A stretch of DNA of 62,957 bases, counting the filler, from Perkinsus chesapeaki ATCC PRA-425 (taxonomy: Eukaryota; Protista; Perkinsozoa), in the NCBI GenBank assembly GCA_013115145.1. It is 8 parts of 8 records of this genome, joined end to end, with 100 filler letters (N's around TTAATTAATTAA, not from the genome) between each part and the next. Parts side by side here need not be neighbours in the genome. Positions count along the whole stretch, not along the records: positions 9,585 to 30,929 come from JAAPAO010000598.1; 7 more parts are not named here. One strand, written 5' to 3'. This document shows positions 5,817-30,929 of this stretch, piece by piece. A model generated the notes under the pieces. That model did not search any database. It had not been told where the DNA came from and saw nothing but the letters and a program-made list of their open reading frames with translations. The stretch's first letter is position 1; each line of letters starts with the position of its first letter. The translations under genes and the position numbers were made by a program.

Positions 5817-8105
5817 ATGCCTAAACGTGGAATCAGAAGTCATACCAGTATTCTCACTCGCCGTAAGCGTTATTCTGCTAATAAGAGAGCTCGTGAATTA
5901 CTAACAAGTCCTCCGGATGGTGTTCAGGATTACGAGATTAGCGATGTCGGCCATACATTAGTTGATATAACAAGCTATATTGATTTTCTCACCGATCTAG
6001 GGAAAGAACATCTAGCTTCTACTAATGCTGATCCTCTGCGCGATGGTACTGGTTTGAATGCTCTATTGCCCAGTCAGCATCTCACAAATGCTCTTTACTC
6101 TTTGCCTGAGGTCGCCAAAGACGTCACAAATGTTTTTGTTAAATCGGTGGAAAATAACAATCTTGTGGATTTTGTTGGTCGTTTGAAGGGCTCGCCGACC
6201 GAGAAGGAGGTAAAAGTGCTTGAGCAGAGATTTGGTGATGCAGCTCAGCAGTGTCGAAGCTCTTTAGCTAAGATCTTGCATTGTTCTACGAGAAAATCTC
6301 AGTGTGGTGCTTCCATTCGATCTGATATACTCCGAAACCTTATTTCAGCTTTACATGATCCAGATTCATCATTGTCTTCTGAAGTTGATGCAGGAGTTTC
6401 GCTTGGTATAAGCCAGCCTTTACGTAAGACGGGGATCTTCCCTCCATACACGAAGAAGCGTGATGCCGAAGAGCTTCAACTTCTTCGTCTTCATCAGCTT
6501 GCCAATTATACCTCTGCAAGTGAAGATGCTTCGATTATTGAAGATATTATATCGAAGGAAATTCGCCTGGGCCGAATGAAACCACTCTCGCTGGATGAGG
6601 CTAATGATCCTTCTAGAGTTTATGCGAAAATGGCATTGATCAAGAAGATTGGTTCGGCATCTTCTAAGCCTAAATATCGCATTGTCGAAGATTACCGTCG
6701 GAATGGTTTGAACTCACGAATGCATGCAGAGGAGACAGTTTCTTTACCGAGACTCCGTGATGTCCAAGAGTGCCTTCGTGATTTACTATACTATACGAAA
6801 AGTGTTGATTCCCGTGTTATAGATTGTCAAGCCAGACATCTAATGTTCTTTAGCTATGATATTGCTTCTGCTTTCAGAAACTTATTTGTATGTCCGTCTG
6901 ACGGTCGTTGTTTATGTGTGTACGCGAATGGCAAGGCGTACCAGCATGTCGCCTTGCCATTCGGAGTAAAATTAGCCCCTTATCATTGGTGCAGATTTGC
7001 AGCGTGTGTTGTACGTCTTATACGAAAAGTTATCCAAAGCGTATTCCCTGACACTCCATTTATTAATATGATTTACGTCGATGATGGATTTATGGTTTTT
7101 CCGGAATCAATTTATAATATGTGTGTATGCTTGTGTCTTCTTGTCTGGAGAGTATTGGATGTTAACCTTTCCTGGGAAAAGTGTATTTTCCACGAGACCT
7201 CTGACCAATACATAGGTTTTGTTTTCTCCATTGCTAAGGATGAGCTACATGTTAGTATTCGGGAAGGTATTATGTCTAAAGCTAGAGAGCAAGTTGTTCA
7301 ACTCTTACAACAACGTTTAGTTACAAGATCGTCACTTGCCAAATTGGCTGGTCGCCTTATCTTTGTTACTCAGTTAGCACCTTATTTACGCAGTTTTCTG
7401 CAACCTTATTTTGCTTCTCTCAGTGTAATCGAACGGATATCTTTACGTACTTTACGACTCTCTAGTAATTCTGCTACGTTCCAAGTTTCCCAATTCTGGC
7501 TATTGATCCTTCAATCCTCTACGCTTCGTATTTCTATTAATATCGACTATGGTCCTTCGTCATCTTCTATTCATTTGATTGCTTGTTCAGATGCTAGCAT
7601 CCTGGGTCTTGGTGGTTTCGTGTCCTACTCGTCGACAGGCTGCTTCTTCTCTTACTCGGTTTCTGCTACTACTCTCGGTCCATGGACTCAGTTTTTACGT
7701 CAACCAGGCTCCGTTTGTAGCTCTGACATGACGTTGTTAGAATTATTAGCGGCGTGTGCTACAATCCAAGCATCAATGTCTCTATTGGGTCCATCGTTAC
7801 GCTCTGCTCAATCACATCCCATTGTTCTCCATTTATTCTCAGATAATCAATCTGCTGTAGCAGCGCTTTCCAAACTTTATTCTCGGAGTCCAGTTCTCTC
7901 TTCAGTCCTTCGTTGTTTAGCCCGTCTGTTGTTTTGCTCTTCTTTTATTCTGGATGTAGTTTATTTGAAGGGCTCTACGAATTGGCTTGCGGATGCACTT
8001 TCTCGACAAATCCCGGTTGATGTACCTTCGACTTGGACTCAAGCCTCCATTGATATCTACTTTCGAGATCTAATGACCACAGCAAATTTTGTTGCTATCG
8101 AGTGA
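5817..8105 (+). CDS. Reverse transcriptase / RNase H (DIRS-type)
   Basis: YDIASAF, LPFG, YVDD; RNase H CSDAS, LLELLA, SDNQSA, NWLADALSR. ATG 5817 preferred over 5694 because the extension is T-rich and looks non-coding. Confidence 0.93.
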   Translation: MPKRGIRSHTSILTRRKRYSANKRARELLTSPPDGVQDYEISDVGHTLVDITSYIDFLTDLGKEHLASTNADPLRDGTGLNALLPSQHLTNALYSLPEVAKDVTNVFVKSVENNNLVDFVGRLKGSPTEKEVKVLEQRFGDAAQQCRSSLAKILHCSTRKSQCGASIRSDILRNLISALHDPDSSLSSEVDAGVSLGISQPLRKTGIFPPYTKKRDAEELQLLRLHQLANYTSASEDASIIEDIISKEIRLGRMKPLSLDEANDPSRVYAKMALIKKIGSASSKPKYRIVEDYRRNGLNSRMHAEETVSLPRLRDVQECLRDLLYYTKSVDSRVIDCQARHLMFFSYDIASAFRNLFVCPSDGRCLCVYANGKAYQHVALPFGVKLAPYHWCRFAACVVRLIRKVIQSVFPDTPFINMIYVDDGFMVFPESIYNMCVCLCLLVWRVLDVNLSWEKCIFHETSDQYIGFVFSIAKDELHVSIREGIMSKAREQVVQLLQQRLVTRSSLAKLAGRLIFVTQLAPYLRSFLQPYFASLSVIERISLRTLRLSSNSATFQVSQFWLLILQSSTLRISINIDYGPSSSSIHLIACSDASILGLGGFVSYSSTGCFFSYSVSATTLGPWTQFLRQPGSVCSSDMTLLELLAACATIQASMSLLGPSLRSAQSHPIVLHLFSDNQSAVAALSKLYSRSPVLSSVLRCLARLLFCSSFILDVVYLKGSTNWLADALSRQIPVDVPSTWTQASIDIYFRDLMTTANFVAIE

Positions 8106-8226
8106 GCCTACTAATAGTCTCTCCTGCTTCAAGCAATACTCGAGCTACCTTAATTCACAGTCTGTAACTCTTAGTCCCGTAAGTAAACTGGTTGTTGTAT
8201 GAATAGGTATCTTTCTCTTTTAACTC

Positions 8227-9324
8227 ATGGTTGATTGGAAGTGCCTACCATCCCTTCGCTGGCAGCCTCTCCCCAGCTTCGCTACGTGCACTAAGTTGTA
8301 CCACGTACCAACTGCAAAGGCACCCCTAGACCGGACGCAAAATACACGAGGTTCTAAAAGCTCAAAGCGCAGCAAGGCAAAGCATTTTCTACATGGTTCT
8401 ATCTCGTCCCGCGAAGTGTCTGCCTTTTGCCTATCTGGTTACTCAAAGGGGACGTTATCACAAATGAAGTCGGCATGGAACCTCTATCTAAATGTCACAG
8501 CCGCCGCATCTGTGGCGCCACTACCTCTTTCTCGTTTGTCTCTATGTTCCTTCGTTTGCGCTATGACCAAGGCGGACTACGCTTACAACTCGGTCCTGCG
8601 TTATCTGACCCACGTCAAGAACAAAGCAAGTATATCTGGGTATAAGTCGGCGCCCACCACTGATTTTTGGGTTACTTTGGCTCTACGAGCTTCGGGCAAG
8701 CTCCTCGGAAAAGGCACAGTCCTTCGTGCCCACACTCTAACCATCGAGCAGGTGCCTTCCATTTTGGAAAAGCTCAACGAAGCCCACGCCACTATGTTTC
8801 TTCTTGGCACCGTAGCCCTACTACGTATCAGTGAGCTACAACGTGTGCAAGTTCAAGACATCGTCTTCACTTCAACCGGAATCCATCTTCGGATCCCACG
8901 AAGCAAGACTGATCAATGCGCATCAGGGCGCGTAGTTCCTCTGGTTTGCCTTAGTTCTTCCTTTAGTTCTTCTAAAAGATGCACCTCTAACTTATGCGTC
9001 CCTCACGCCCTCAAGCACTGGCTCGACAGCTCGCCAGATCTCTCCGCCAGCAGCAACCTCTTCACCAAGGAACAGTCAAATTCCTTTCCAATGTCCCTCA
9101 GCGACGCCCTTTTCGACTTACTGGGCAACCGCCCGCGCTGTACGACCCATTGCATGCGCCGGTCGGGGGCCTTGATCGCCTTCCGTCGAGGAATGCCATT
9201 AGAGGAAATAGCCCTTCTAGGGCGGTGGTCGGGTACTCAAACTTTGGTCGACAACTACCTTCGTGACGCGACCGATGAGCTCTCTCAAATCTCCAAACAA
9301 GTATTTAAAGTCTGGCGTACCTAA
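8227..9324 (+). CDS. Tyrosine recombinase of retroelement
   Basis: LLRISEL (R), PRSKTDQ (K), HCMRRSGA (HxxR), LGRWS, DNYLRD (Y). Confidence 0.92.
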   Translation: MVDWKCLPSLRWQPLPSFATCTKLYHVPTAKAPLDRTQNTRGSKSSKRSKAKHFLHGSISSREVSAFCLSGYSKGTLSQMKSAWNLYLNVTAAASVAPLPLSRLSLCSFVCAMTKADYAYNSVLRYLTHVKNKASISGYKSAPTTDFWVTLALRASGKLLGKGTVLRAHTLTIEQVPSILEKLNEAHATMFLLGTVALLRISELQRVQVQDIVFTSTGIHLRIPRSKTDQCASGRVVPLVCLSSSFSSSKRCTSNLCVPHALKHWLDSSPDLSASSNLFTKEQSNSFPMSLSDALFDLLGNRPRCTTHCMRRSGALIAFRRGMPLEEIALLGRWSGTQTLVDNYLRDATDELSQISKQVFKVWRT

Positions 9325-9484
9325 ACGGTGAGTCGGGAGGTCGGGGTCACTATCGTCGTCGCGCAGGACGCGCACCGCTCCCTCTACCACCGTATCGGCG
9401 TGACAGGGAGTTGGGTGCAAACAGGCTCGCGCGCCCAGCGCTCCGCTCCGGCGGTTCCATGTCTGCGAGACCCTTGGATTCCGC

Positions 9485-9584
9485 NNNNNNNNNNNNNNNN
9501 NNNNNNNNNNNNNNNNNNNNNNNNNNNNTTAATTAATTAANNNNNNNNNNNNNNNNNNNNNNNNNNNNNNNNNNNNNNNNNNNN
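9485..9584. other. Artificial contig spacer
   Basis: N44-TTAATTAATTAA-N44, stops in all six frames. Confidence 0.97.
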
Positions 9585-9847
9585 GTGAAGGCATAAAGAT
9601 AATATATAAATGTAATGAGGAAGTGAAGGCATAAAGATAATATATAAATGTAATGAGGAAGTGAAGGCATAAAGATAATATATAAATGTAATGAGGAAGT
9701 GGAGGCATAAAGATAATATATAAATGTAATGAGGAAGTGAAGGCATAAAGATAATATATAAATGTAATGAGGAAGTGAAGGCATAAAGATAATATATAAA
9801 TGTAATGAGGAAGTGAAGGCATAAAGATAATATATAAATGTAATGAG
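9585..9847. repeat. 38-bp minisatellite, about 7 copies, at contig end
   Basis: Unit GTGAAGGCATAAAGATAATATATAAATGTAATGAGGAA head-to-tail, one GTGGAG variant, no spacers. Confidence 0.95.
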
Positions 9848-10000
9848 TCATGGAGTAATATACGGATCGTACTAGTAGCAAGCTTCTTAAGCTCCTTTAG
9901 TTTCTTAGAGTCGTTGGCCAGTACAGAATCAGCCAGACCTGTCTCCTTCAATAACTGATCAAGATCACAACACTCGACCTCAATGGTATGAAAGGAGTAG

Positions 10001-12361
10001 TTACGAGGTCCCAGTCGTCAGCCAATCTGGTCTCCTGCGGTCGATGTAGGGACTCTCCCGTCTCGAAGTTATGGAAGTATTTAGAGCCTGCGATGACTTC
10101 AAGTGACGATTAAGCCGATTGCATTGCTCACCACGGCGGTCAAAGAATGCATGCCATTTGATACCAAGAAGTGTATGCGGTGGAGCTGTCCTTGACAGTG
10201 ACTCTAGCAGCTCCTTCCGAGGATCCAGTTCACCCTTGGCCAGAACCCTGCCTCCAGGGCCCGTACCTGAAGTTCCAATATCCGACAGTGAGGCGTCTTC
10301 ACTGATCACCATGTGATGCCTGAGCCTTTGTCAATTGGGACTGCAAGGAGTGGCCAACACTTCGCCTCTTTGTCTCTGTTCCCTCCTCTTGTTCGATATA
10401 CGCATAGTCTCGAGTGTAGTCTATTTTAACGGGCTTTAAGTCGAGGAACCTGATAACTTTCCCCACCACCACAAGCCCGGAAGTACAGCGCCCCACCTGG
10501 GCAGCGTTTTCACGTGTTTGCCTGTGTAACATTCATGACAGTATGAACCAAAGGTGTAGGTGCACTGGAGCTTTGCTGGTAGAGTCCGACAAAGGCAGCA
10601 CGGTATAAGATGATTCGGCACGTGAAGCTTCCGGTTGCCCTGCACACCAGTAACATGTGCCAAAGTCTATTGCTTACCTTCATGTGAAGCTTCTCGAAGC
10701 AAGTTTCACAAAGGCAATCTCGGCACTTCGGACAGTAGCAGCTGGCTACTATACCGCACTCGACACAGTACACTTGACCTGACACCATACTTGACATTTT
10801 TCAAGATTGAGGTACTCACCGGCCTCGTTGGGGCCTATGGTGGCGCTGGGGTCCTCTTGCTCGAGGACCTCCTGGGAGATCTGGAACCTGAATAAATAAC
10901 AGGTCACTAGCGGTGGGTGCTCCGCCGCGGTGACCTGTTCCTCTCGTTATCGATGATCTCCAAACAGTACTTCACCTCCTGGGTGTCAAGCTCAGTTTCA
11001 AGACGGTACTGCAGGGAGAAGGCCTTGATGAACACCTTAATGGTTCGGACCTGCTCGATGGCCTAGAAAGGGTTTGAGGATATCGGGCATACCATGAAGG
11101 GCTCCGCAACAACATCGACTTTGAGTATCTCAGCAATTTCTCGAACATACCGGGGAGACACTATAGGCTCCTGCGTGAGGATATTGGAGTTGCACTCGGC
11201 CTCATAGGACTGATCAAGGCCACAAAGCTCTGCGGTTCAAAGTGGAGGAGGTACCCAAAGCATCCGGTTGATCCTGAGTTTGATGTGCTCCTCCTTGCTG
11301 ACATGTCGGCAGTGGTCCAGCAGCTGAGCGAAGTAATCGTAGAAGGGGTGCTTCCAGGTTGACTCGGAGGTCTCTTCATTAACGTAACATATTATACCTG
11401 ACACGGACATATGGATAGGTACCAGCAAATCTAAAGCCTACTTCCAACCCCGATGACAGAAGTCCATGGCGGGGGCAGCTCCTGGTCCGCGAAGCTCTCA
11501 ATGACCCAGGTGTATTCCTCGTCGATTTGGGGATCAGCCTGTACATGGAGACTTGGTGGAAGGTTGTGCATCTGACCTACTTGGAGGTATGAGAACCACT
11601 CGTGAAGTGTCGGTATGGCCCCAGAGCACCGGAGCATTGGCACCACGTTATTGCTGGTCCTCTCCACAGCCTTCTGCGTGGTAGGGTCAGCTATACCGAA
11701 GAGGAAAAGTGGATCGCAGTCCAGAAACTCAAGGGCTGCCTGAGGCAATGGGGGCCTTGGAAACGCTTGGAAGAGTATAGATCGTTTACCTCGCCGAGTG
11801 CCTGCGTATCTTCCAGCGCGGTCATGACTTCTATCCAAAGCGTATCAACATCATCTGTCCAGTCCATAAGAACTGACTCTAAGTCTTGAAAGCAAACCTA
11901 CCACCAACTTTACTAGCAGGCAGGCGGAGGCGGAGGCACAAGGCTTACTCTGAACTCAGGTCCCAGCTGCCCCTCTCTAGAGCAGAAGAATATCTCACTG
12001 GTCTCAGCGCTAGGGTCCACCCCACTGGCGTCCTCCCCTTCCCGGTTGACCTAAACAAATCCTATAGGTACTCAGGGGTAGCCGGCGTCGACGCCTACTC
12101 TGATGCTGGCCTTGTAGCCAGCGGGAATGATACCCATATGAAGCTCATCGGGAGCCCCATCGGGATCTGGGGGGTACTGGAATCGGTAGGCTGTTGGGAC
12201 CTGAGGACCAACTCTGGCTGACCAACTCGGAGACCTTTCTTGCCTACCTCGGCATTGACAGTGACAGGATATCCAAAAGACAGGATCCTGTGTATTCGAG
12301 GCTGGGCCTTAGGCCGCACTATAGGGTACTCAACCTCTTGATAGTCGTTATTTGGCGGCAT
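10001..12361 (-). CDS. Multi-exon WW-domain and B-box zinc-finger protein (boundaries approximate)
   Basis: ELPPPW...YYVNEETSESTWKHP (WW-like, split by an intron); CVECGIVASCYCPKCRDCLCETCFEKLH and CCLCRTLPAKLQC..YCHECYTGKH (B-box-like). Confidence 0.75.
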
Positions 12362-12527
12362 TAACCATAACTACCCTACTAGAGCCATAAAGGGACGAAA
12401 ACACAAAGTGAGGGTAGGAGGAGGAGAAGCCTTCGTTGGACAGTAGAGGGTGCATCATGCAACATGTTAATAGAGACACTTTATACTTCACAATCAAACA
12501 ATACATATCAACATCCCCGTATACCCG

Positions 12528-14858
12528 TCAATATCGACGGTGCTGAGGAGGGTACGGTGATCGCCCACCACCGCCGCCCTCTGACATGACTGATGAACGA
12601 ACATCATAACAGGACCGAGGGAAGTCATCGGCCCGGCCATTGGGAGCTGGAGACTGCTGGAGCTTCTTCCGAGCCAAGGCGCCCATCTTCATTGGGGACG
12701 CCAAAATACCACCGGCGTTCATGGGAGCACCGCCTCCCCGGTGAGCTCCTACATTAGGCCCACGGTTCTCGACATCGACCGACCGAGAGACACCATGTGG
12801 ATATTTCCGATAATTAGGTTGGCTCCAGACCGGCGGCAGTCCGTGGTGATGCTGATGGCTTCCCTTGTGGGCTGGAGAGGAGTCTGGTACTTGGCTGGGA
12901 TGCGGCTGTCCTCTTTGATTTGATGGCAATAGTACTCCTTGAACCACCAATTGTTGGCCTCCTCTAGGGTGAGCCATAGGTACAGGAACTCCCTGGACCA
13001 CTGGTGACCTTGGTGACTGATGCCTCGGTATATGAGCAGGTGATGCAGATGTTCCGACTCTTCTCCTTTTGCCCACCACTTGCCTCTGCTGAGTGGGGCT
13101 GCAGTAGGGCACCCCTCTCCCTGGGGACCCTTCACGAGCATACCGCACATCTCGATGGCAAGATGCAACTGACCGTGGCGAGTCATCCGGCGCAACTCGA
13201 CCAACTGGAGATCTTCGATCATCCAAGACTGGCGAGCGTGGTTGCTGTACGTTCTGCCTCGTCATGCCTGCGGCAGGGGACCTCTGTTCACTGAATTCTG
13301 AGTAGTTCGGGACAGGTGACGGCGGCGGTGGACATCCTCGCGGCAAGGCTCTTGGGTCCTCCATTTGGCTGTATCGCTGTGGACCTTTAGGTGAGTGGTT
13401 CGACCTAGGCATCGGCACAGGGCTCGGACAGCATCTCGGGGATCTAGATGAGCATCCTCTGTACCAGGATCTTGGGCTGCCGTCCTGAGCACACAATGTT
13501 GATTGGATATCCTAGCCAGTGCGCACCTCTTCCTCCTCCTCTTCCAGCATCCTGCGTATCTCCCCTTGAACTATCCCTCGCCCGACAATCTCTGCTGCAG
13601 TTGGTCTTCTCGTCCAGTCCCTGTTAAGGCAATCTCTAAGTAGCTGCCTCAACTCCGGTGAGTAATGCTTCGGCAGTTCAGGCGTTGGCCCTTTGGTTAT
13701 TTTATCAACTAATGCTTTGATATTAGTTGCATCAAAGGGCACCTTTAAACAACACATCTCATACAGTATACACCCGAGGGCCCAGATGTCCGATGCCCAG
13801 TTGTAGGGTCTCTCTTCGCATATCTCTGGGCTGAGGTAATAAGGCGTCCCTATAGTGGTCTCGGCAAATGCCAGAGTAGAGTCAAGTATCTAAGCGTACT
13901 TTATACTGTAGATGCAGAATCACCTCAGGCAGCAAGTGCGGAGATATTCAACTTTTCGAACAAGTGGATTATCATGAATTACTGACCGACCTTGGAAATG
14001 CCAAAGTCACCCAGTCGAAGTCTATCGGTCCTGGTCAGGAAGAGGTTCTGTGTCTTTAGGTCTCTATGAAGGATATGCTTCTCGTGCATATATCTGATGG
14101 CAGCAGCAGCATCTCCATCCCCTCACGAGAGCGGCGGCTACTTCAAGGCCAGGGCCGCCTGACTGAACCATCGCAATATCTGTGGCTCCGTGAACCCTTT
14201 GCCGAAATCTCGTGCCTTCCTTATTCGAGCGGATAGATCTCCTGAGTGGGAATAGCCACTGGTTGAGTAACCGATTCACAATGAGGTGGTGGTAGGACAA
14301 GATAGCTCCGGTGAATGTTATCACTGTCGCTGGGCCACAATCTATAGCCTCCCAATGCCTACGAAAAGTCGAAAACCCAAATACTCGAAAATGAAACACT
14401 CTCCCTGTAAAAGTCGAAACTGCTCATGCAGAACTAGTGGCAGTTTGCACAACAGAGTAATATGCGCTGCTGCTGTAACGCTCGTGTCCAAGTGGGCAAT
14501 CGACTCACCACCCTCTGCGTAGTCCATGATGATACACAAACCATTAGACTCCTCAAAAAATGAATCACGATAGCAGACCACGTAGGGATGCTTTAACGAG
14601 GAAAGGACCTATAGACAGGCAGGCAACTTCAGCAAAGTGATACGGTCGCCAGTTGTTGCTGTTGTTGCTTTTCGCTTGTTAGAGCTGGTGAGTTACTTTA
14701 ACTTCGTTCCTCGCTTCCTTTTGTTGTTTTTTATTCATTCGTCTGATATCAATCGTCTTCATAATATATTCTCGGCCATCTCTGCCTCTCACTAACCATG
14801 CCTTGCCGAAGGACCCTTCCCCTATTTTACGAATACGAGAGTATCCTCTAGACGCCAT
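12528..14858 (-). CDS. NIMA-related (NEK) Ser/Thr kinase, multi-exon, with low-complexity SP-rich tail
   Basis: IGEGSFGKA, EARNEV, CIIMDYAEGG, HRDLKTQNLFL, DFGISK, GTPYYLSPEIC, SDIWALGC, PFDATN. Confidence 0.93.
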
Positions 14859-15014
14859 TAAACCAGTAGCAACGATGACTTCTACTATCATCACCGATAT
14901 ATTCACAAACTCAACTGCCAACCTTATTTATGAACATCGTAATTAAGAACACCGTGTTGGGAATGCTATGGTAGGCCAGCTGGAGCGGCGGAGTGCCTAA
15001 TAGTCAGCCTCGGG

Positions 15015-18000
15015 TTAGTCTATCGATTTTATGTAGCCTGTCTTGGCGTAGTGACCATGTAAGACCATAGGGCGTATCGACTCGAGCCTGACAACTGCCT
15101 CGTCTATAGCTTCCTCCCCTATGCCGAGATCCCTGACAGAGCACTTCACGCACCGGAGACATACACTGCGCGTTTGCTACCTGAAGGATCTCCCCACTTG
15201 CTGCATAAAACAGTCAAAGTGATAGTCAGTGACGGCCAGTACAGAGTGCAAGCTCTCGAGGTTCCTTCCCTTGTACTCTGTCGGGCCTGAACAACAACAC
15301 TTAGCCATACCACAGTGTCCTCTGCGATATTGATATACCCCCGAGGACCATGGTGATATAGGCAGATTGAGCTTGCTTTATGAACTTAAGCTTGGATCCC
15401 TCGAAGAAGCCATTGATCCGCTTGTCTCTTTCAATACATTCGTACCTAACAACTATCCACCACGGTCGACTATCGGCAGTCGTCTACAAGCGTGTTATGA
15501 AGCTCTCAAGGCCCTCGTGGCCGCCCAACTTCTCAAATAGCTTTTGCTTGCCCTCCTTATCGTACTCCTTCTGAGCCACTTCCATCCGAACCATGCATCC
15601 AGTGGTAATGTCCGATCTGGTCCTATTCACAACCTGTAATTGATCTTTACGGCAAGCAAGTCTAAAGCCATTTACCAGGAACACGTCGTCCAGCGTTATG
15701 CTGTCAACACCTATCTCCTTTGAAGCCTCCACTAGGCTCTCACAGACCGCATCGAAATGGTAGTTAGTGATATTCATAAGATAATGGGCTGGCCTCAACT
15801 GCCGAGGATCATATTGAACTGGTCCACCAAAAGCACCACTAAGATACTGATACCTGAATAACATCACACGGGACGCACCGAGCACACCTAGTACATTTTC
15901 ATCCGTATCTGCTTCTGCTTAGCTTTGCCTTTTTCAAAGAAATATCTGACTCTCGTATCGGCCTTGGCTCTGTCATACCTGCAAGTGTGCTGCTGCTGCA
16001 GCGTGGTACAGACTGCCGCGGCATTACATATCCTCCACCAGAGCTTCCAGAGATTGGTCACCACCGAGCCGATCAACTAGAGTCTTATCGTCATCCTTAC
16101 CCTTCATTTCTGCAACGGACAATACGTCACTCGACAACACAATAACCCACCCAAATGGAACTCATCCTCTTTGACGCCGAGCACTCCCTGCCTAATCTGC
16201 TCTAATGAGACATATACTTCATCCACCAACTCCGGGGAGACGCCTGAAGTATCTTTTATCGATGTGAAATGCATGCTCAAACCTCTACCTGTATCAATTA
16301 AAGCCTTGTGGAAGTTGGTTAGGAAAGCATCGAAGTGATAATCGTTGACCCCTGAGCACCAATAACTCTACCATCAGACTCTGCCAAATGCTCTATCACC
16401 AAGATGCTCGTGTATTTGAAACAGTCCTTTCCCTTCATACGTCTGAGGGCCCCCGAGGAGCCCCAGGATGTACCTCCCTATGTTCTGCTTAACTCTATCG
16501 AACTGTGGTATAGCAAAAAAGCTTTTAATCCGAGGATCGGTCGCCGCCTGGTCCACAACTTCATTAACAAGCTTCGTGATGCCCTCTTCCTTTCCCAACC
16601 TGCTTCTATTAATATAACACTTTCAACTACACTAGACTCTACTTACCCAATGAACAGGTGCTCCTTGCCGGCATCGATACGTTCTTTCGCTAGCTGCATT
16701 CGAACTGTACATCCAATAGTAACATCTGTACGAACTGGCTGCAAGGCTTTCATAACCTCCCGAGCAAATCCTAAAACATAGAGATATGTGCAAGCTAATT
16801 CATACCGACTTTTCCCCACTTCTATCAATTCCCATATCCACGATTAGCACTCCCAGCATGATTCCCAACATCGCATCGAAATGTCTATCATTGACATTCA
16901 GGCCATAATGCGCTGGCCGCAGCTCCTTCGCATCGTACTTCGACGGTCCACCTAAATGAGTCGATTCTCCGCTACCTCCACTTGCTTCATTCACCTATTA
17001 ACAATGCAATATACTGTGTCATCCTGTCTTTAATAGTAGTTATCCTAGCCTTGTTCTTCTCAAGCAGACTTCGCAATCTCGGATCCTCTATCGCCTTATC
17101 ATATGCCTTGCTCACGAATGTCGATAGGACTTGCCCCCCACCAAGACGATCGAATCTGACCATGACTGCACGACCAAAGCATCACGACAACTTACAGGGA
17201 TTTCTCTCTCGAGGCCGCTTGAGTAGCCCTGGCATCATGCTTTCTGAAATCGGGATTAACAACATTGCTTCGCTCCGTCTCCAACAACACGGCACCTGAA
17301 ATGCCACCCGTCTCAGCTGAGCTCGAAAATATCTTTGCCAACCATGAACTGGAAACGCCGCGGAAGTTCACTGAAGACTGCTGGGATTTATTCAAACGTC
17401 ATATTTAGCCAAGCACATGTAAAGCGGCGAAAGCATGCTAATATTAACGAGTGCTTTTGCATACGCTCATCTTCCAGTTTGGAAACTACCTTAATGAAAA
17501 ATGAGATTCAGTCGGCGGAGCGAAGCGTATCCTTCTTACATTCATCTGTAGTAGATTCATCTAAGCCCCTTTGAAGTAGAGCCTTTCTACATAGTTCCAG
17601 GAAGGCATCAAAATGATAATCAGATACTTGAAGAACAGCATGAACTCGTTCTAATGGTCTGCCAATATACTCCACCGGTGACCCCAACAACTGTGCAATA
17701 TATTCACCTAAATGATGCTTCCTCCTCCTCCTCATCATCATTCACTTGGCTTCAATGGCTACTACTCACCTTGGCTCGCCTTTATAGTGTCCAACTTGCT
17801 GCCGGAAAAGAACAGCTTTATCCGAGGATCCTCTTGAATGAGTTGATAAAGGTCATCAACGAACCCCTCAATACCGTCATCTCCCCCTAGCTGCTCAAAG
17901 AGCCCATCAGTACCTTATCACAACAGCAGTCACTTTGCCACTAAATCCTCCTCCCCCTTTATCCACTGACCCGAAGCCTGTGCCTTTTGCATAGCTATCT

Positions 18001-20188
18001 CATATCGAACCGTACATCCTTTGGTAATATCAGATCTAACCTTACCAACTACTTCTAAAAAGTCCTTAGAGGCTTCCTCATCCAGTTCTAACACTCCACA
18101 GGCAGCCTACACATATACAACAAGTGAATGAAATATATACAAGCGATGGGATAATAGGGATCATGCCGTATATTCAATAAGGCGTCATCATCATCATTGA
18201 TGAAGCTAAACTCGGAAACGCGCATATGCTCCTAGGAGAGGAAAACTCCCGCAGTGCCCCCCCCAAATATGCCCAGCAGATGCAATCCAGAAACTCTACA
18301 CGGATCTCAGATCTCCTCCTCGTTATTAAAGAAGTCGAGGCCTATCGCGTGAATCACTGAATCGTGTAATGCTCATAGTCTTTTATACTCGTTACCATTT
18401 TTTGCATACAAAGGCCACTCACGCACCAACACAGAACTATCTTCTCGGACTGCATCGAACAACTAATATGTCGATTCGGTTTTTGGGGAATCCTTTCGCG
18501 GCCCAGCCGCCCTGCTGCTGTTGGATATTACGTGAATATTCTCCAGTACAGCATCGAAATGGAAATCAGTGATGTTCATATTAAAATGGAAGGCCTGTAG
18601 CTGAGATAGATCATACTTCTTAGCACCACCACAGAGACCAATCAATACTTCACCCTAACAAAATTGAATATCTTCCTCCTCGCCCCACTTCCAAGCTGGC
18701 CCTACTATCTTGGTCTTCTGATTATCCTGCTTATCAGCTTCTATATCGAAGAAGTACTTTACTCGTGGATCAGCTCGACATCCCATATGCCTGAGGATGA
18801 TGCATAATACCACCACTGTTACCATCCCCACCGCTCTACATGGTCTCGACAACTGCTTCAATATTCATTTCACCACCCAATCGTTCTAGTACACTCTTCC
18901 CTTTAACCATCTTTTGTGCAGATTCAATGCCTCTTGCACAATTCAACACTGATGCTCTGATCGGCTCCATTAACACCAGAACCTATTCGCGGGGCACCCT
19001 GCATCAACAGCAGCAAGCAGCAAGCCTCTATCACCTCATCAACAGTAGCATCATCGTAGCCTAGACCACTTAAGGCCTTCTCACAGTCCATCAAAAAGCA
19101 GTCAAAGTTGAAGTCGTCTATCTCCATATCCTTGTGGATTTCTACCAAGTCCCGACCTAACCATGGGACAGTACTTTCCCAAAACAAACCAGAACATTCA
19201 AGACCACACCGAGGCCTCCTCCTCCCGGCATATTACCATCATAACATTTTTCACCTCCGAATAGCTCAGTGAAATATAGCGTTTGGCCAGCTTTGACTCT
19301 GGTGATAGGTTGAGGAATGGATATATGATATTCACATATTACTTATTAATATTCTTATCCTTGAAGAATTTGTTGAGTCTATTATCCATATTAATAACCT
19401 CATATACCCGATCCATGAACTCTGCAATACCGTCTTTTCCTGAATGCACCCAACTTTCTATCAAGTGCCAGTGGCCACCCCAGCATAACCCTGGTCCTCT
19501 CCCTTCATTACCTCTGAGTTTCCGGAAGAGATAGTCTTCACCACCACCCTGCAAGCTTCTCTTTGCTGTTTCCATCCTAACAGTGCATCCTGCTGTAATG
19601 TCTCTCCGTACCTGACAAGGATATTGAGGCCAAGTGATAGTACTAAGTACACTCACCTTCCCGAGAGCAAGCAAGAGATCTTCCTTAGCAGCTGGATGAA
19701 CATTTAAACTGGTGAAACTCGAGTCGAACAGCTCGAGTATCTGAACTCGATGCGTGCACGTGGAGCACAGAAAGATGCCCAGTACCGCATCGAAGTGATA
19801 GTCCGTTAAATTAAGGTTGTAATGAGCAGGCTTAAGTGCCTCGGAGTCGTACAGTACCGGACCACCAGTGAAGCCCGAAAGGAACTGAGGACATCTACTA
19901 TCCCTACCGCTCATCCGCATCACTTTACCTGATGAAGCTTCTTCTTAATATTAGACATCTTTCTCTGATTCTTTTCTAGATAAGCTCTGAACACCACTAC
20001 CACTCCTTTCCCAACTCTCATCCTCAATTACCTTGTTCTAGCATCAGCTATTGCCTTCGAATACATGATATCCACTGCAGTGACTATAGCCAGATCGCCT
20101 CCTACTCGTTCGTAACTACCAATTCACTATATCCATACGCCCCCTTTTCAGACTCATACAGCGTCCTAGACTTATCATCATTAGCCAT
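15015..20188 (-). CDS. Multi-exon protein with eight tandem group I truncated (2/2) haemoglobin domains
   Basis: Eight repeats of L(F/Y)xRLGG...D.R...FF...GP..Y....L...H..(L/M).(I/V).D.HFD, read across ~50-nt introns. Start MANDDKSRTLYERVGG at 20188, stop at 15015. Confidence 0.85.
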
Positions 20189-20306
20189 CTTGTTCCTGAA
20201 TGCACTGAGGCCAAATACATTCCCTTGTGCGTTCTGCTCAGCTGCTTGCTTTACCGACGATTTGAACCTGCGCCGCCGTCCTTGCGTGTACCATATTTCT
20301 ATTATT

Positions 20307-20700
20307 CTACTTTTGAATGTCTTCCTTCGCCTGTGCCACTAAGCTTTTAACCGTTTCGACTTCAATATCAACCATACCTCCACCGTTCTGTCCCGGTGTA
20401 GTGGCCGCTACTAAACTCTTTATATGCCCAAGTTTGCCTATATAGAAGAACGTATTGTAAAAGTGATAAAACGTCTTACCAGCAACTGCAGTTATTCTAG
20501 TTTTAACGTTCTGTATCTCATCTCGTGTCTTGCCTACTGTGTTGAGGAGTTCCTCAACGTCTACACTTCTAACTGCCATTTTCAATTCGTCCCGCAACGG
20601 TATCGCCATCCAAAGAATCTTGCGCACTTGTTCTATCTCGCGTTTCCTTCACGCATCCTCCATAGCATGCCGCAAAGTTTGCACCGGTCACACGTAAGAC
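20307..20700 (-). other. Coiled-coil-like coding fragment; separate broken gene or N-terminal extension of the globin gene
   Basis: REIEQVRKILWMAIPLRDELK..VKTRITAVAGK, preceded by an in-frame TGA; the frame upstream of the globin ATG is also open for about 35 codons. Confidence 0.3.
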
Positions 20701-20859
20701 TAACTAGCAGAGCCCGTCGCTTCACTCCAGTGTTGTGTAGCTCTTTGTCAGAGGGACCATGGAAAGGAGGCTAAGAGAAGTTCACATGTGAGGTGTAAGG
20801 AATATGGATGTATGGTATGAGATAAATAATATGCGGAACAGATCGTCTGTTACAGATGA

Positions 20860-23800
20860 GGATATGTTACTGGGATACATCGAATAGTAAATCGTTATTA
20901 CGGCGGTATACGCATAGTCCCGTCATTCAACGTCACAACTCATGCACCGTAATTTTCGATCCGTACGTAATATCGATATCGCATATCGAGTTCCATTACA
21001 GTGGCCGTTTTTAGCATCGAGGTTTTTGTGTAACACTATCGGGGTGTTTATTTTCAGAAGAAGAAGATGGGGAGTAATAGAGTTTAGAAATTTAATAGGA
21101 GCTGGTATGGAGTTATCGTGGTCAGTAATAGAGTCTGCGCTGACTAAAGTGTACAACTGACCGGGAATACGTCTAGTGATACTCTCATTTAGCTCATCAA
21201 TACGTGCACGAGTTGCGCTGAGAATGGCTCTTTCAGAAAAACAAGATGGATTACTATAATTAGAAGGATTCGTGATGTCTGAGTATACAAAATCTATAAG
21301 ACTATCAATAGTTTGAGGATAGATAAGTTGTTCATGTGGTTAGCGGTATTATTTGTGAGTCGGGTTGATATGGGTGTGGAGCTGGTATACTCCCATTGCC
21401 TAATTGAATGAGCCACTGCGAGAAAGAAGTTAGTCGCGTATGATTGATGGAGTGAGCTGTGACATAAAACGCATATTTGTAGTTAGAGTGAATTTCATAA
21501 TACTTTGCCATCAGGGAGATTTGCAAATGCACGCGCTAACTATAATAACTCGTCCAGCTCTGCCGCAGGGTCTGCGGAGTACGGGAGTGACTTGTCTGAA
21601 GTCCCCAGCTAGAGTGAGAAGTTTTCAACCGAACGGGAGTTGAGCATTCATAAGATCCTTCAAAGAACGATCTAGAGCTTCTAAAGACCACCTCGTGGCT
21701 TCATCTCAAACAATGAAATGTACATTTCGTAGGGTTTTACCTGTGTTGGATCGTTTCATAAAATTACACACAGAATCCGGGGACGCAGGGATAGGCAATT
21801 TTAGTACGGAGTGCGCTGTTCTTCCCCCCTTGGAGAATTGTCACCCATGTGGAATTTTTAGGAAAATCTATGTAATGTACAGATCGAGCCAATTGATAGT
21901 CTTGGTGGCCAACCGAATTAGTTTGGAAGCATGCTGTTAGTTTGGTTACCGGTGGACTTCTCATCATTGCGTTCATGAATTCTACCTGCCCAAATTGTAC
22001 TTTGTTGATGGTTCGGGAGATGGACAGGGAGGCGTAAATTTTACGCTAAAATACTTTTACGCTGTGAAACCGAATGAGAACGATTGTGGAGAGGAAATTT
22101 ATAAATTCGTCATGCAGCTTCTGTACAGCCTACATAACGGGAGTCAGTGTATTCGGGTAACTCGTCACCAGGAGTAGTTGGAGTATTACTGGAGGCTGGT
22201 GGTTGTTGTTGGTTAGCTGTCATGGTAGGATTAGATAATGCGCGTCATAGCAACACCAGGGACAGTGGGGGACTACCCATGGATTGGTTATTACAATAAT
22301 TATGCCGTTACGATTACGTTTTGTGAAGGAATTCCCACATTGACTGTCAATGTGGCAATGGCTGGCCTCCACGACCAAGGGATCCAGAGCTTCATCGATG
22401 TTGCCACTATCAGGAGTTGGTGGAATAACTGCCCCATCTTCTGTGCTGTAGTGTGGCGAAGTGGGAGACAAACTGTTTAGGAATGCAGTTACCTCTGCGC
22501 CAGGAGCACAGGTAGGGGACACACCAGGCCCTGGCTCACAGCCACGTGAGCTGCATCTCATACGTTTCCTAGCCGGTGCATGAGTCGTCGAAGGCTTAAA
22601 CCGTCCAGGCTTCCAATGAACATTTTTGGTGGTCAAATGCCAATTGGCAGCCAGCTCGCTTTCGTGGCAGTTCATCAAGTGCTGCCTTGCTTTCCAAGAA
22701 TTCCAAAATGCACTACCGCTTTCTGGTCGCTGACAAAAATGACAGCAATATTTCCATCCATTCACTGTGAGCAAGGGCTCGAAGAAGCCGTCGGGGCGGA
22801 AGTTAACCTTGCATGGACGACCACGGCCACCAGTCATTAATAACAGACCGCTCAAAGAATTGGGCTGCGGTAGAACGGCTTCGCTCACTAGAGCTGTGTT
22901 ATTACAACACTGTTATAGAGTCTGGTCCCATACGAGGAGAAAAGGAAGTGTTTGGATTCAAATCGATTCAATTGATGCGAGGACAGCATTGCTGTCAACT
23001 TGACAGCGTTCGTCGACAACTCGAGAAAATCGAGGGAGTACAGCCGCTGGAGTGCAGCAGTTACATTCCAGGCTGGAAGGAAACCTAATTCCCCTACTGA
23101 CGAGCCCAATTCCTAGATCTAAGTAGCTATTAACAACACAGAGCCACGAGAGCGCCGCGACATGGTTACCAAATCTGCTACTTAATACGGGAAGCATCAT
23201 CCGTGAGAAGGGATGGCTTCTCATCTCAGGGAACGACTCGTTCCGAACGAGGGAAAAACCGGGAAATTTTCCCGGAATTTCCAGGAAAAATGGAAAATGG
23301 AAAACCGGCAAACCCTGCATTGACATGGTGGGCGCCTTTTGTATTGAGGATATGTGTTGATCGCTTATAGTAGTAAGTGATGAGAAGTTTTTCGGAAAGC
23401 GTTTAGTACACACCCCATCTTTCCTACAACGGGCTGAAGGATTGTGTACTCCACATGGTTCATGAATCATATATCTTGTTACTATAGCCGCTATAGTATA
23501 GCGTACAAGTTAGGGTTCAAGTTACGGTCCGGTTACCGGACTCCGGTATTCCAGCTTAGATAAGAGAATCGATGTGATCGATTGTGAATTGACCAATGGT
23601 CAATGACCATGGTGTTGTATGAGTAACATGTGAATATGAGGCAGACCACGCTTTTGAAAATTCAATTGAGTGGACAAAAGCCAAGCAATGACCGAATATA
23701 CTATCTTGGACGTTTTTGATAAGGCTTTTGCACTTCAAATGGAATACTCTACAAACGATATCTGGGCGATCTACAGGGGTTTGACCGCGTTGAAGAGCAG

Positions 23801-29145: not shown

Positions 29146-30929
29146 ATGTATAGAGGAGGTCTCTTGGTCTTCAATCTCGCTCTCGTGTCGGCCGCACCTT
29201 TCTTGGGTAAAGAGCCCAGCACTGCTAATAAGGTATCCATCACTCTATCTACTACTAATGATGTTTACTCTATGTATGCCCGCCCGATGTCTGGTAACGG
29301 ATACTTCTTCGAAGGCACCCCTTCTGCTGACTTTTATTCAATGTGCGAGAAGGACGGTGATAACTGTTACGGCGAGGCCGCTGCCAAAGGCATGCCCGAA
29401 GCTGCTGTTGGTAAACTATATGAAATGGACATGCCAGCCACTGGTGGTAAAGTGATGACTAATGAAGACAGCGGTTGTGTAGACCCTTCCCTGTTTGATG
29501 ATATGGTACGTGATCCTTCTACAGCATGGGGTAATACAGCTCAAATGGCTGGTACGTATAAGTATCTTGGGCTTACTGCTGATACTGATGAGTATATAAG
29601 TATGCTTCCTGGTGACTTCGTTGCGATGTCTTATCTCTCCTCCATCACTTACGGCGAGCATATGGTTGATATGATGAATGCGGGTGAAGTTGATTTGGTC
29701 ACATTTGGCAATCATGAGTTTCAGTTTAAGAACAAGTGTCCTCCAGCTGACATGGCTAATCATCCTGAATATAATGATGTATGTGTCGCTTGGAACATGG
29801 CTACTGGTAACTTCCTTTACCTCGGTAGCAACGTATATGAGGATAAGGAGAAGACTGTTCGTTTCGGAAGCAAGTTGGAGGTTGATGATGAGATATCTTT
29901 TGTCAACGCTACAGTCCCCAAGAACCAGAAGGTATTCGGTGAGGAGCCTAGCTATTATGCTATCTCTGGAAATTATTGGTATAAGATGGTTAAAGGTAAA
30001 AAAGTTTGTTTCGCTGGCACTACCGAGACTTCTGCTTCTCAATCGATCGTTGGCGACAGCAACGTATGGTTATCCGACATGATGGACGCTGGTGTTGATG
30101 CTACTCGCGAGATGAACGATGATGGTTGTAATTTAGTAATCGTTCTCACTCATCAACGTGAAGGTTTTGATGTCCTATTTTGGAGAAAGGCTGTTGTTGA
30201 GGAGGGTATCAAGATTGATGCTATTATCGGAGGTCATGATCATTTCCCAGCCTTCTTGAACTTGCAACATCCCACCAAGCCTGATATAATCACTCCAGTA
30301 TGGAAGATGGGCATGGACGGCCAAATGCTCGGCAAGTTTGTATTCGACTTTGATGATGAGAATCCAAATGGGAAGCTGAGATTTGCCCATGCCATACCTG
30401 TATTTGATGGTCAATGTGATCAACACTTTATTGGTACTGATAATGAAGAGTGGTGGAATAATAATGTTATGCAAACTTGGACTCATTGGGTGGAGCCTAT
30501 CAAACCTATGGCGGAGACCAACATGGATAATCTGCTCTTCAAGGGTTTGTATGATACTGCGGATATCAGGTCTGCCGAGTCGCGCGTTGGCAACATGTTA
30601 GCTGACCTCTTCCTGTGTAACTCGTCCGTTACTTTCGCAGCTCTTGATGGTGGTAACATTCGTTACGGATTGAGTCAGCTCTTTGCTGAACGTATTCCTC
30701 TTACCGAGTTGTACTTGTATGAAGAAAACCCTTTCCTTGGCGGATTGGTGTCTTATGATATGTCCTTGATGGAGTTGTTCGGTTATGTACTCTACTCGGC
30801 TCCGATTGTGATGGGAATTGGAAATGCGGCTCGCCCTGTTACTTCCGGATTCGAGGTTGAGATCGACCCAGCAACTACTAAGCACGGTGGTGTTACTCTC
30901 ATCCGGTTTACTGGAACTAGTCACATGGC
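29146..30929 (+). CDS. Secreted 5'-nucleotidase / calcineurin-like metallophosphoesterase, truncated by the spacer
   Basis: Signal peptide; TNDVY, PGDF..SYLSSITYGEHMVDMMN, FGNHEF, LTHQ, IIGGHDH, RSAESRVGNMLAD, DGGNIR. Confidence 0.88.

What the first reader, a model, noticed from the sequence alone, without database searches (positions are those of the whole stretch)
15015..20188. Eight truncated-haemoglobin domains in an (AB)4 architecture
Seen: eight 2/2 globin domains alternate between two types. Type A (1,3,5,7) has Y.....L.PAHY.(L/M)N(I/L/V)TD.HFDA and is followed by a conserved linker (V/T)R.D(I/V)T.GC(T/M)VR(M/Y)..A. Type B (2,4,6,8) has Y.G(R/K).L...H..(L/M).(V/I).D..FD.F. Each keeps a His at the proximal position. 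Established: group I trHbs are usually single small domains acting in O2/NO chemistry. Inference: an A-B didomain was duplicated to four pairs, and the invariant linker Cys may have a structural or redox role. The join between domains 4 and 5 (about 17170-17520) allows stop-free splice models but is ambiguous; domain 5 has no ATG of its own, which favours one gene. I cannot say whether this has been described.
Basis: partly seen in the sequence, partly recalled or inferred. Interest (0 to 1): 0.75.

Follow-up and report, generated by a model that had tools for sequence, protein, structure and literature searches.

The report
Eight-domain truncated haemoglobin gene of Perkinsus
This is one intron-rich gene of a Perkinsus-type oyster or clam parasite that strings eight small haem-binding (truncated haemoglobin) domains of two alternating kinds onto a single ~1,180-residue protein; the kind is already known from computer surveys, and this copy has clear relatives in other Perkinsus genomes.

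Summary
The minus strand encodes eight group-I truncated-haemoglobin (Pfam Bac_globin) domains in strict A-B-A-B order, each with the proximal His.

Three corrections:
- The gene starts at ATG 20579, not 20188. A 108-residue helical, non-globin N-terminal extension precedes domain 1.
- Domain 5 does have an in-frame ATG (17163), but by homology it lies inside a 40-nt intron.
- The "linker" after A domains is a prolonged H helix. Its Cys is kept in only 40 of 62 A domains of the family (otherwise mainly Phe or Tyr).

My 31-exon GT-AG model gives 1,177 aa (20579 to 15015). It is collinear with the syntenic P. marinus locus, P. olseni proteins and an intronless metagenomic ORF. The d4-d5 join is supported by linker homology, by the P. 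marinus model and by purifying selection on the linker exon. No RNA data could be used.

Trees give A and B as clades (100/98, 99/99), position-by-position orthology of all eight domains, and a history AB → ABAB → (AB)4.

The likely function is multi-haem O2/NO chemistry (NO dioxygenase), which is inferred only. Multi-unit T1 globins were reported in silico, so this is a new member of a known kind.

The parts
15015..20579 (-). Whole coding region of one gene: 31 exons, 30 GT-AG introns, 1,177 codons plus the stop (15017-15015).
   Evidence: Hand-built model. It is collinear with P0140, P0003 and P0008 and with the syntenic P. marinus locus L004.
20171..20579 (-). N-terminal non-globin extension, residues 1-108 (exons 1-3, introns 20479-20438 and 20310-20268). 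Predicted helical; no Pfam family.
   Evidence: Homologous to the N-termini of P0008, P0003 and P0133. The first 34 residues are 88% identical to P. marinus. Pfam finds nothing above cut-off. The AF2 model of the P. olseni paralog gives three long helices at low confidence.
19537..20170 (-). Domain 1, type A (residues 109-245). F8 His at 19824-19822. B10 Tyr, CD1 Leu, E11 Leu.
18899..19536 (-). Domain 2, type B (residues 246-375). F8 His at 19136-19134. B10 Tyr, E11 Gln.
17909..18898 (-). Domain 3, type A (residues 376-511). F8 His at 18588-18586. Unusual distal pocket: B10 His, E7 Gln, E11 Ile. Interrupted by the 425-nt intron 14 (18531-18107).
   Evidence: The exons on both sides of the long intron are conserved in P. 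marinus.
17204..17908 (-). Domain 4, type B (residues 512-644). F8 His at 17642-17640. Its H helix is completed only after the 244-nt intron 17 (17539-17296). The stop at 17510-17508 that seemed to end a first gene lies in this intron.
17196..17295 (-). Exon 18: end of the d4 H helix plus the d4-d5 linker. This is the decisive piece for the one-gene reading.
   Evidence: The linker has the same 24-residue length as in P. olseni P0140. It matches the P. marinus model P0005. All 100 bases align to P. marinus at 68% identity while the flanking introns do not align. pN is 0.11 with pS saturated.
17156..17195 (-). Intron 18 (40 nt, GTAAGT...GGTCAG). It contains the ATG at 17163-17161 that could be mistaken for a start of domain 5.
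   Evidence: Splicing here gives ...REKSL|FDRLGGG, which matches ...KKPLFDRLGG of relatives.
16664..17203 (-). Domain 5, type A (residues 645-780). F8 His at 16910-16908. CD1 Leu, E11 Met.
16087..16663 (-). Domain 6, type B (residues 781-912). F8 His at 16412-16410. Unusual distal pocket: B10 Val, E11 Ile.
15547..16086 (-). Domain 7, type A (residues 913-1048). F8 His at 15786-15784. B10 Tyr, E11 Met.
15018..15546 (-). Domain 8, type B (residues 1049-1177). F8 His at 15248-15246. B10 Tyr, E11 Gln. Ends in a conserved C-terminal tail HGHY.K.GY.
19576..19608 (-). H-helix extension motif of d1 (RRDITAGCTVR). The same motif lies at 18005-18037 (d3), 16700-16732 (d5) and 15586-15618 (d7).
   Evidence: Family conservation: Arg, Gly and Arg invariant, Cys in 40 of 62. 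Predicted helical.

Best explanation
Shown or strongly supported:
- The region is one protein-coding gene of a Perkinsus species (Perkinsozoa, Alveolata), on the minus strand from 20579 to 15015.
- Thirty short GT-AG introns (mostly 40-80 nt, plus two of 244 and 425 nt) are removed.
- The product is a protein of about 1,177 residues: a 108-residue helical N-terminal extension, eight group-I (trHbN-type) 2-on-2 globin domains in the fixed order A-B-A-B-A-B-A-B, and a short conserved tail.
- The eight positions are each orthologous to the same positions in relatives.
- The array arose by two doublings of an already differentiated A-B pair.

Inferred:
- Each domain binds one b-type haem through His F8.
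- The A-type H helix is prolonged by about 18 residues (R.D(I/V)T.G.(T)VR.E.A) and holds the A domain to the following B domain, so the working unit is an A-B pair.
- B domains carry the Tyr B10 / Gln E11 pair that stabilises bound O2 in M. tuberculosis HbN and Tetrahymena trHb. They most likely turn NO plus O2 into nitrate (NO dioxygenase), or otherwise handle O2/NO.
- A domains have an apolar E11 (Leu, Ile or Met), so they should have different ligand behaviour.
- Eight haems on one chain give the parasite a high local capacity for this chemistry.
For: Family and fold:
- Pfam Bac_globin hits on exon pieces.
- The closest solved proteins are group-I trHbs, with Tetrahymena pyriformis 3AQ5 at E 4e-18 (A) and 9e-20 (B).
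- AF2 didomain model of the P. marinus ortholog: pLDDT 88.7, pTM 0.84, with an extra helix carrying the motif. Foldseek gives TM 0.90 and rmsd 1.4 A to 3AQ8.

Gene model:
- 31 exons with GT-AG at every intron.
- Collinear with P0140 (48% identity over 1,081 columns), P0003 (43%) and P0008 (53%) without gaps at exon joins.
- Collinear along the syntenic P. marinus locus from residue 1 to 1172.
- Exons have 52% identical bases against 13% for introns.
- pN is 0.145 against a saturated pS of 0.84 in every domain, in the N-extension and in exon 18.

One polypeptide:
- P0003 is an uninterrupted 3.4-kb genomic ORF with the same domain order.
- P0005 joins d4 to d5 as in my model.

A/B clades, positional orthology and duplication order.

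Relatives are (AB)n throughout.

Organism: the neighbouring 5'-nucleotidase-like ORF is 92% identical to P. chesapeaki and 82% to P. olseni and P. marinus.

Distal-pocket residues.
Against: - No transcript evidence. Splice sites are therefore inferred from homology and GT-AG rules only.
- A few junctions (for example intron 20 in d5 and intron 24 between d6 and d7) have alternative GT or AG choices.
- Haem binding and any enzymatic activity are untested.
- Two domains lack Tyr B10 (d3 His, d6 Val) and two lack Phe CD1 (d1 and d5 have Leu), so not all eight need be equivalent or even active.
- The full-length AF2 model (of a P. olseni paralog, shallow alignment) is only moderately confident (pLDDT 78, pTM 0.62). 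No coordinates were available to inspect the contacts of the prolonged helix.
- Public annotations disagree on gene limits: P. marinus splits the locus inside d3, and P. olseni merges two units into P0133.
Confidence: 0.78

Rival explanations
1. Two adjacent genes of four domains each: the first ending at the stop 17510-17508, the second starting at ATG 17163.
For: - A stop follows d4 in the unspliced frame, and an in-frame ATG opens MVRFDRLGGG.
- The two halves are ancient duplicates, so d5 begins much like d1.
- Four-domain proteins exist in the databases: P0008 and P0007.
Against: - Ending at 17508 leaves d4 without the end of its H helix.
- Splicing 17539-17296 and 17195-17156 restores it and gives a linker equal in length and similar in sequence to P0140, P0003, P0004 and P0005.
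- That exon is conserved while its flanks are not, and it has pN 0.11 with pS saturated.
- P0008's contig ends 180 nt after the gene. P0007 sits on a 1.7-kb contig and begins inside the linker. Both look truncated.
- P0003 carries all eight domains in one uninterrupted ORF.
Confidence: 0.05
2. The same single eight-haem protein, but its main role is O2 storage, buffering or sensing during the hypoxic phases of the parasite's life, not NO detoxification.
For: - Group-I trHbs bind O2 reversibly.
- Covalent multi-domain globins of invertebrates are O2 carriers (established knowledge).
- A and B pockets differ systematically, as would suit graded affinities.
Against: - The Tyr B10 / Gln E11 pockets of d2, d4 and d8 resemble those of M. 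tuberculosis HbN and Tetrahymena trHb, for which NO dioxygenation is the reported activity (established knowledge; closest solved structures).
- Nothing in the sequence separates the two roles.
Confidence: 0.3
3. Only part of the array is catalytic. Domains with aberrant pockets (d3: His B10; d6: Val B10 and Ile E11; d1 and d5: Leu at CD1) are structural spacers or regulatory, perhaps hexacoordinate, haem sites.
For: - Residue table.
- In the family these positions are Tyr or Phe in nearly all domains.
- P. marinus d6 also lacks Tyr at B10.
Against: - All eight keep His F8 and both Gly-Gly hinges.
- All are under similar purifying selection, with pN 0.09-0.22.
Confidence: 0.15
4. A decaying or non-expressed gene copy (pseudogene).
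For: No RNA evidence was available.
Against: - There is an open spliced frame over 1,177 codons with canonical splice sites.
- Synteny and strong purifying selection against P. marinus.
Confidence: 0.02

Closest known systems
Perkinsus marinus locus GG685288.1: Pmar_PMAR024501 (P0005, 695 aa) plus the preceding 422-aa Bac_globin model; both 'hypothetical protein'
   Same: Syntenic ortholog, lying between a 5'-nucleotidase-like gene and a protein kinase gene. It has the same N-extension, the same eight domains, the same d4-d5 linker and the same C-terminal tail. Identity is 68% over 712 aa.
   Different: The public annotation cuts the locus in two inside domain 3 and skips parts of d5 and d6. 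The window comes from another species: its neighbouring 5'-nucleotidase-like ORF is closest to P. chesapeaki (92%).
Perkinsus olseni and P. chesapeaki (AB)n proteins (KAF4713054.1 = P0140, KAF4665176.1 = P0133, KAF4651942.1 = P0008) and unnamed metagenomic proteins (P0003, P0004, P0013)
   Same: The unit is the same: N-extension + (AB)4 + tail. Domains are orthologous position by position.
   Different: Identity is 33-53%, so these are probably paralogs or more distant lineages. P0133 joins two units into 16 domains. P0013 has no Cys in the helix motif. P0003 has no introns.
Multi-unit T1 (group I) truncated haemoglobins found in silico (Hade et al. 2017, IUBMB Life 69:479; as cited in PMC7475203 and PMC7082302)
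   Same: Several 2-on-2 globin units on one polypeptide in microbial eukaryotes.
   Different: I could not read that paper. I do not know whether it covers Perkinsus, the strict A/B alternation, the fixed eight positions or the N-extension. No paper in the held library mentions Perkinsus globins.
Single-domain group-I trHbs with solved structures: Tetrahymena pyriformis trHb (3AQ5), Chlamydomonas (1DLY), Paramecium (1DLW), M. tuberculosis HbN (1IDR)
   Same: Fold (TM 0.8-0.9), Gly-Gly hinges, His F8, Tyr B10, and Gln E11 in B domains.
   Different: Those are single chains of 116-136 residues. Here eight are fused. A domains have a two-residue insertion before helix E, an apolar E11 and an H helix prolonged by about 18 residues.
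Covalent multi-domain 3-on-3 globins of invertebrates (Artemia nine-domain, Daphnia and Ascaris two-domain haemoglobins); from general knowledge
   Same: Tandem globin domains arose by internal gene duplication.
   Different: Different globin fold and family. Those are extracellular O2 carriers of animals and have no alternating two-type pattern of this kind.

Membership tests
Group I truncated haemoglobin (trHbN; Pfam PF01152 Bac_globin) | Sequence match to the family profile above the curated threshold | tested here: met
   Exon pieces score 32.8, 27.3, 38.1 and 25.3 bits against a cut-off of 21. Shorter pieces fall below it.
Group I truncated haemoglobin (trHbN; Pfam PF01152 Bac_globin) | 2-on-2 helical fold | tested here: met
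   Tested on the P. marinus ortholog's d7-d8 (about 75% identical to the window). AF2 pLDDT 88.7. Foldseek gives TM 0.90 and rmsd 1.4 A to 3AQ8. The window's own joined sequence was not folded.
Group I truncated haemoglobin (trHbN; Pfam PF01152 Bac_globin) | Proximal His F8 and the two Gly-Gly hinge motifs | tested here: met
   His F8 is present in 8 of 8 domains. The hinges are GG or a close variant in all eight; d2 (RG), d6 (GK) and d4 (GS) each have one hinge altered. His F8 is present in 125 of 125 family domains.
Group I truncated haemoglobin (trHbN; Pfam PF01152 Bac_globin) | Distal Tyr B10 and Phe CD1 | tested here: inconclusive
   Tyr B10 in 6 of 8 domains (d3 His, d6 Val). Phe CD1 in 6 of 8 (d1 and d5 Leu).
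Group I truncated haemoglobin (trHbN; Pfam PF01152 Bac_globin) | Group I rather than group II or III | tested here: met
   The best solved matches are all group I (E 1e-18 to 1e-9). Group II matches are far weaker.
Group I truncated haemoglobin (trHbN; Pfam PF01152 Bac_globin) | Binds haem b | not testable with these tools
   Needs expression and spectroscopy.
Multi-unit truncated haemoglobin | Two or more trHb units on one polypeptide | tested here: met
   Several exons run from one domain into the next, for example 15633-15488 (d7 into d8). The spliced model has eight units. Relatives have eight in an uninterrupted ORF. There is no cDNA.
Perkinsea N-extension + (AB)4 globin family (defined here from relatives) | Homologous ~105-residue N-terminal extension | tested here: met
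Perkinsea N-extension + (AB)4 globin family (defined here from relatives) | Eight domains, each orthologous to the same position in relatives; A and B as separate clades | tested here: met
   Domain tree and unit tree. Typing by A and B profiles is about twofold in score.
Perkinsea N-extension + (AB)4 globin family (defined here from relatives) | Prolonged H helix with R.D(I/V)T.G.(T)VR.E.A after every A domain | tested here: met
   Four of four A domains. Arg, Gly and Arg are invariant in 62 A domains.
NO dioxygenase (function, as in M. tuberculosis HbN) | Tyr B10 / Gln E11 pair in the distal pocket | tested here: inconclusive
   Present in d2, d4 and d8 only. A domains have Leu, Ile or Met at E11.
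NO dioxygenase (function, as in M. tuberculosis HbN) | Catalytic turnover of NO with O2 and a reductase partner | not testable with these tools
   Needs an enzyme assay.

The most novel reading that the evidence does not exclude
The A and B domains are obligate, functionally different partners, a 2-on-2 counterpart of alpha/beta pairing. The A haem (apolar E11, prolonged H helix clamped onto B) would tune the neighbouring B haem allosterically or feed it electrons. The eight-haem chain would then be a self-contained, cooperative NO-detoxifying machine peculiar to Perkinsea, used against the nitric oxide of mollusc haemocytes.
Probability: 0.12. Interest if true: 0.7.

Novelty: new member of a known kind. 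Interest (0 to 1): 0.42.

Why it matters
- No multi-unit truncated haemoglobin appears among solved structures: all PDB matches were single domains. I found no biochemical study of one in the papers I could search.
- This family offers a clean case. It has a fixed eight-domain array of two differentiated domain types, conserved across Perkinsus and unnamed relatives, in parasites that damage oyster and clam stocks.
- The corrected gene model shows that the public Perkinsus annotations of these loci are cut or fused wrongly. That matters for anyone counting globins or looking for the protein by mass spectrometry.
- If the protein protects the parasite against host nitric oxide or hypoxia, it bears on how Perkinsus survives inside haemocytes.

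Tried and rejected
- A first model with two genes (521 and 533 aa). I dropped it when the relatives' d4-d5 linker was found encoded between them.
- An intermediate idea that the d4 H helix is the stretch VVSKLEDERMQK at about 17490. It fits no GT-AG phase without losing a residue and has no counterpart in P. marinus, so I rejected it in favour of exon 18.
- RNA evidence.
- Rfam scan of 14800-20800, looking for small RNAs in the two long introns: nothing.
- Pfam on the N-extension: only sub-threshold coiled-coil-like noise.
- Literature. Hade et al. 2017 is not held. No held paper links Perkinsus and globins or names the P. marinus accession.
- P0008 of P. chesapeaki as support for a four-domain gene: rejected because its contig ends 180 nt after the model.
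- The joined 1,177-aa model was never sent to a database search, fold or family tool. It was built only inside run_python from window.fa and compared there with sequences already fetched. Searches used exon pieces by reference, or relatives' protein ids.


Full report
**What is in the sequence**

The piece has eukaryotic gene structure. On the minus strand between about 20600 and 15000, short stop-free stretches in all three frames carry globin-like sequence. Ten of these pieces were scanned by reference. Four reach Pfam's threshold for Bac_globin (PF01152): 32.8, 27.3, 38.1 and 25.3 bits against a cut-off of 21. Two more match just below it.

**Gene model**

Reading the minus strand, I placed GT-AG introns so that each domain aligns with its siblings.

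- A first version gave two open frames: 521 aa (ATG 20188 to stop 17508) and 533 aa (ATG 17163 to stop 15015).
- In that version domain 4 lacked the end of its H helix.
- Relatives then showed what lies between the two frames. Their d4-d5 linker (…SNVLRNYDIRK…ANRKPLYDRMGG in P0003, and similar in P0140 and P0004) is encoded in the window as …TTDEC|AVLLETERSNVVNPDFRK…REKSL|FDRLGGG.
- This requires intron 17 (17539-17296, GTAAGA…TTTCAG) and intron 18 (17195-17156, GTAAGT…GGTCAG). The 17508 stop and the 17163 ATG are both intronic.
- The relatives' N-termini are also homologous to two exons upstream of 20188. The start is therefore ATG 20579, and the Met at 20188 is residue 103.

The final model has 31 exons, 30 GT-AG introns and 1,177 codons. 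The introns are 40-80 nt, except the 244-nt intron 17 and the 425-nt intron 14 inside d3.

The joined model was built and used only inside scripts. It was not sent to any search, family or fold tool.

**Tests of the model**

- Alignment with relatives. The model aligns end to end with P. olseni P0140 (48% identity over 1,081 columns), the metagenomic P0003 (43%) and P. chesapeaki P0008 (53% over its 611 residues). There are no gaps at exon joins, and the d4-d5 linker has the same length, 24 residues between the conserved Arg and the LF/LY.
- Organism and synteny. The neighbouring single-exon 5'-nucleotidase-like ORF (29146-30927) is 92% identical to a P. chesapeaki protein and 82% to P. olseni and P. 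marinus proteins. One of the latter is Pmar_PMAR024504, on the same contig as the globin model Pmar_PMAR024501.
- The P. marinus locus. The fetched locus has the same gene order: nucleotidase, two Bac_globin models of 422 and 695 aa, then a protein kinase. The window's model is collinear along it from residue 1 to 1172.
- The d4-d5 join in P. marinus. The 695-aa model joins d4 to d5 exactly as mine does (…TTDECVVLLETERSNVVNLESRK…RRKSLFDRLGG) and is 68% identical over 712 residues. The P. marinus annotation cuts the locus inside d3 instead. That bisects a globin domain, so it is best read as an annotation error.
- Nucleotide conservation. At nucleotide level, exons hold 52% identical bases against 13% for introns. 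Exon 18 aligns over all 100 bases at 68%, while introns 17 and 18 do not align.
- Selection. Over 748 aligned codons pN is 0.145 and pS 0.84 (saturated). Values are similar in the N-extension, in each domain and in exon 18 (pN 0.11).
- An intronless relative. P0003 is one uninterrupted genomic ORF of 3,363 nt carrying the N-extension and eight domains, although its last domain is cut short.

Together these make the one-gene reading much the more likely. What is missing is RNA.

**The family**

A full HMMER scan with the exon piece 15918-15487 found 132 proteins. The best are multi-domain proteins of P. olseni, P. marinus and P. chesapeaki, all named 'hypothetical protein', plus unnamed metagenomic proteins.

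- Profiles built from the window's A and B domains type the relatives' domains cleanly, with roughly twofold score differences.
- The resulting architectures are (AB)4 for P0140, P0003 and P0013, (AB)7-8 for P0136 and P0133, and ABAB for short or truncated entries.
- P0133 (2,375 aa) is two complete units in tandem, each with N-extension, (AB)4 and tail. The second begins with its own Met. In another assembly the same pair is annotated as two genes 28 nt apart.
- More distant multi-domain trHbs exist elsewhere, for example a 1,882-residue protein of the diplonemid Lacrimia, but without the clear alternation.

**Phylogeny**

- In a tree of 46 domains plus 7 single-domain outgroups, A domains form one clade (100/98) and B domains another (99/99).
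- Each of the window's eight domains groups with the domain at the same position in P0140, P0003 and their kin. P0008 corresponds to d1-d4 and P0007 to d5-d8.
- A tree of A-B units splits (unit 1, unit 3 | unit 2, unit 4) with 100/99 support. The history is therefore AB → ABAB → (AB)4, completed before these lineages diverged.
It also explains why the d4-d5 join mimics a gene boundary.
- Intron positions are mostly not shared between repeats.

**Domain anatomy**

- Both types are nearest to the ciliate Tetrahymena pyriformis group-I trHb among solved structures (E 4e-18 and 9e-20), followed by Chlamydomonas, Paramecium, cyanobacterial and M. tuberculosis HbN.
- An AF2 model of d7-d8 of the P. 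marinus ortholog, made with 43 didomains as alignment, has pLDDT 88.7 and pTM 0.84. It superposes on 3AQ8 with TM 0.90 and rmsd 1.4 Å.
It is either a separate helix right after H or one continuous helix of about 36 residues in the full-length model of a P. olseni unit (pLDDT 78, pTM 0.62).
- Across 62 A domains its Arg, Gly and Arg are invariant. The Cys is present in only 40, with Phe in 9 and Tyr in 9. P0013 has none.
- Distal pockets differ by type. B domains have Ile or Val at E7 and Gln at E11 (55 of 63 in the family). A domains have a two-residue insertion before helix E and an apolar E11 (Met, Leu or Ile).
- In the window, His F8 is present in all eight domains. Tyr B10 is present in six (d3 His, d6 Val) and Phe CD1 in six (d1 and d5 Leu).
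- The N-extension has no family match and no obvious signal peptide by eye.

**How it most likely works**

- Shown: a conserved, selected, single-chain array of eight trHbN domains in two alternating types, with a helical N-terminal extension.
- Inferred: one haem per domain through His F8, and A-B pairs as structural units held by the prolonged A helix.
- Inferred from established knowledge of M. tuberculosis HbN and Tetrahymena trHb: O2/NO chemistry, most likely NO dioxygenation, at the Tyr B10 / Gln E11 pockets of B domains, with A domains differing in ligand behaviour.
- O2 buffering is a live rival, and partial degeneration of d3 and d6 is possible.

**Novelty**

Reviews state that multi-unit T globins of multiple 2/2 repeats were identified in silico, and that T1 multi-unit sequences occur in protozoan parasites, citing Hade et al. 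2017 (PMC7475203, PMC7082302). I could not read that paper. No held paper mentions Perkinsus globins or the P. marinus accession.

The window's gene is thus a new member of a known kind, with public orthologs annotated as hypothetical proteins. As far as I could check, three things may be new: the strict A/B alternation with position-by-position orthology, the conserved N-extension, and the corrected gene limits.

Noticed in passing
window 14927-14500 and further down, minus strand: A protein kinase gene (NEK-like by eye, motif GEGSFGKAW) starts about 160 nt downstream of the globin stop on the same strand. The piece 14927-14682 matches Pfam Pkinase at 30.0 bits, just under the 31.7 cut-off. 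A kinase gene sits in the same position in P. marinus.
   Followed up: partly
window 29146-30927, plus strand: A single-exon ORF of at least 594 aa, cut by the piece's edge. It has a calcineurin-like phosphoesterase domain and matches 5'-nucleotidase-type proteins. It is 92% identical to a P. chesapeaki protein and 82% to P. olseni and P. marinus proteins. This identifies the genus and the synteny.
   Followed up: yes
window 20923-21156, minus strand: A short ORF matching the Pif1 helicase 2B domain (38.5 bits), just upstream of the globin gene. It is probably a fragment of a Helitron-type or Pif1-like element.
   Followed up: partly
window 9585-9847: A 38-bp tandem repeat, 6.9 copies at 99% identity, AT-rich with strong GC skew, at the left edge of the piece.
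   Followed up: no
window 18531-18107 and 17539-17296: Two introns (425 and 244 nt) are far longer than the other 28 (40-80 nt). They have no Rfam match and do not align to the P. marinus locus. The P. marinus counterpart of intron 17 is only about 110 nt.
   Followed up: partly
L003 (P. olseni JABANM010026392.1) and P0133: P. olseni carries two complete N-extension + (AB)4 units in tandem. One assembly annotates them as two genes 28 nt apart, and another as one 2,375-aa protein.
   Followed up: partly
L004 (P. marinus GG685288.1) 6632-14196: The public P. marinus annotation splits the orthologous gene inside domain 3 (422 aa + 695 aa) and omits parts of d5 and d6.
   Followed up: yes
window 12528-13496, minus strand: A 322-aa ORF rich in Pro, Ser and Arg, with no Pfam match, in the GC-richest part of the piece.
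   Followed up: no
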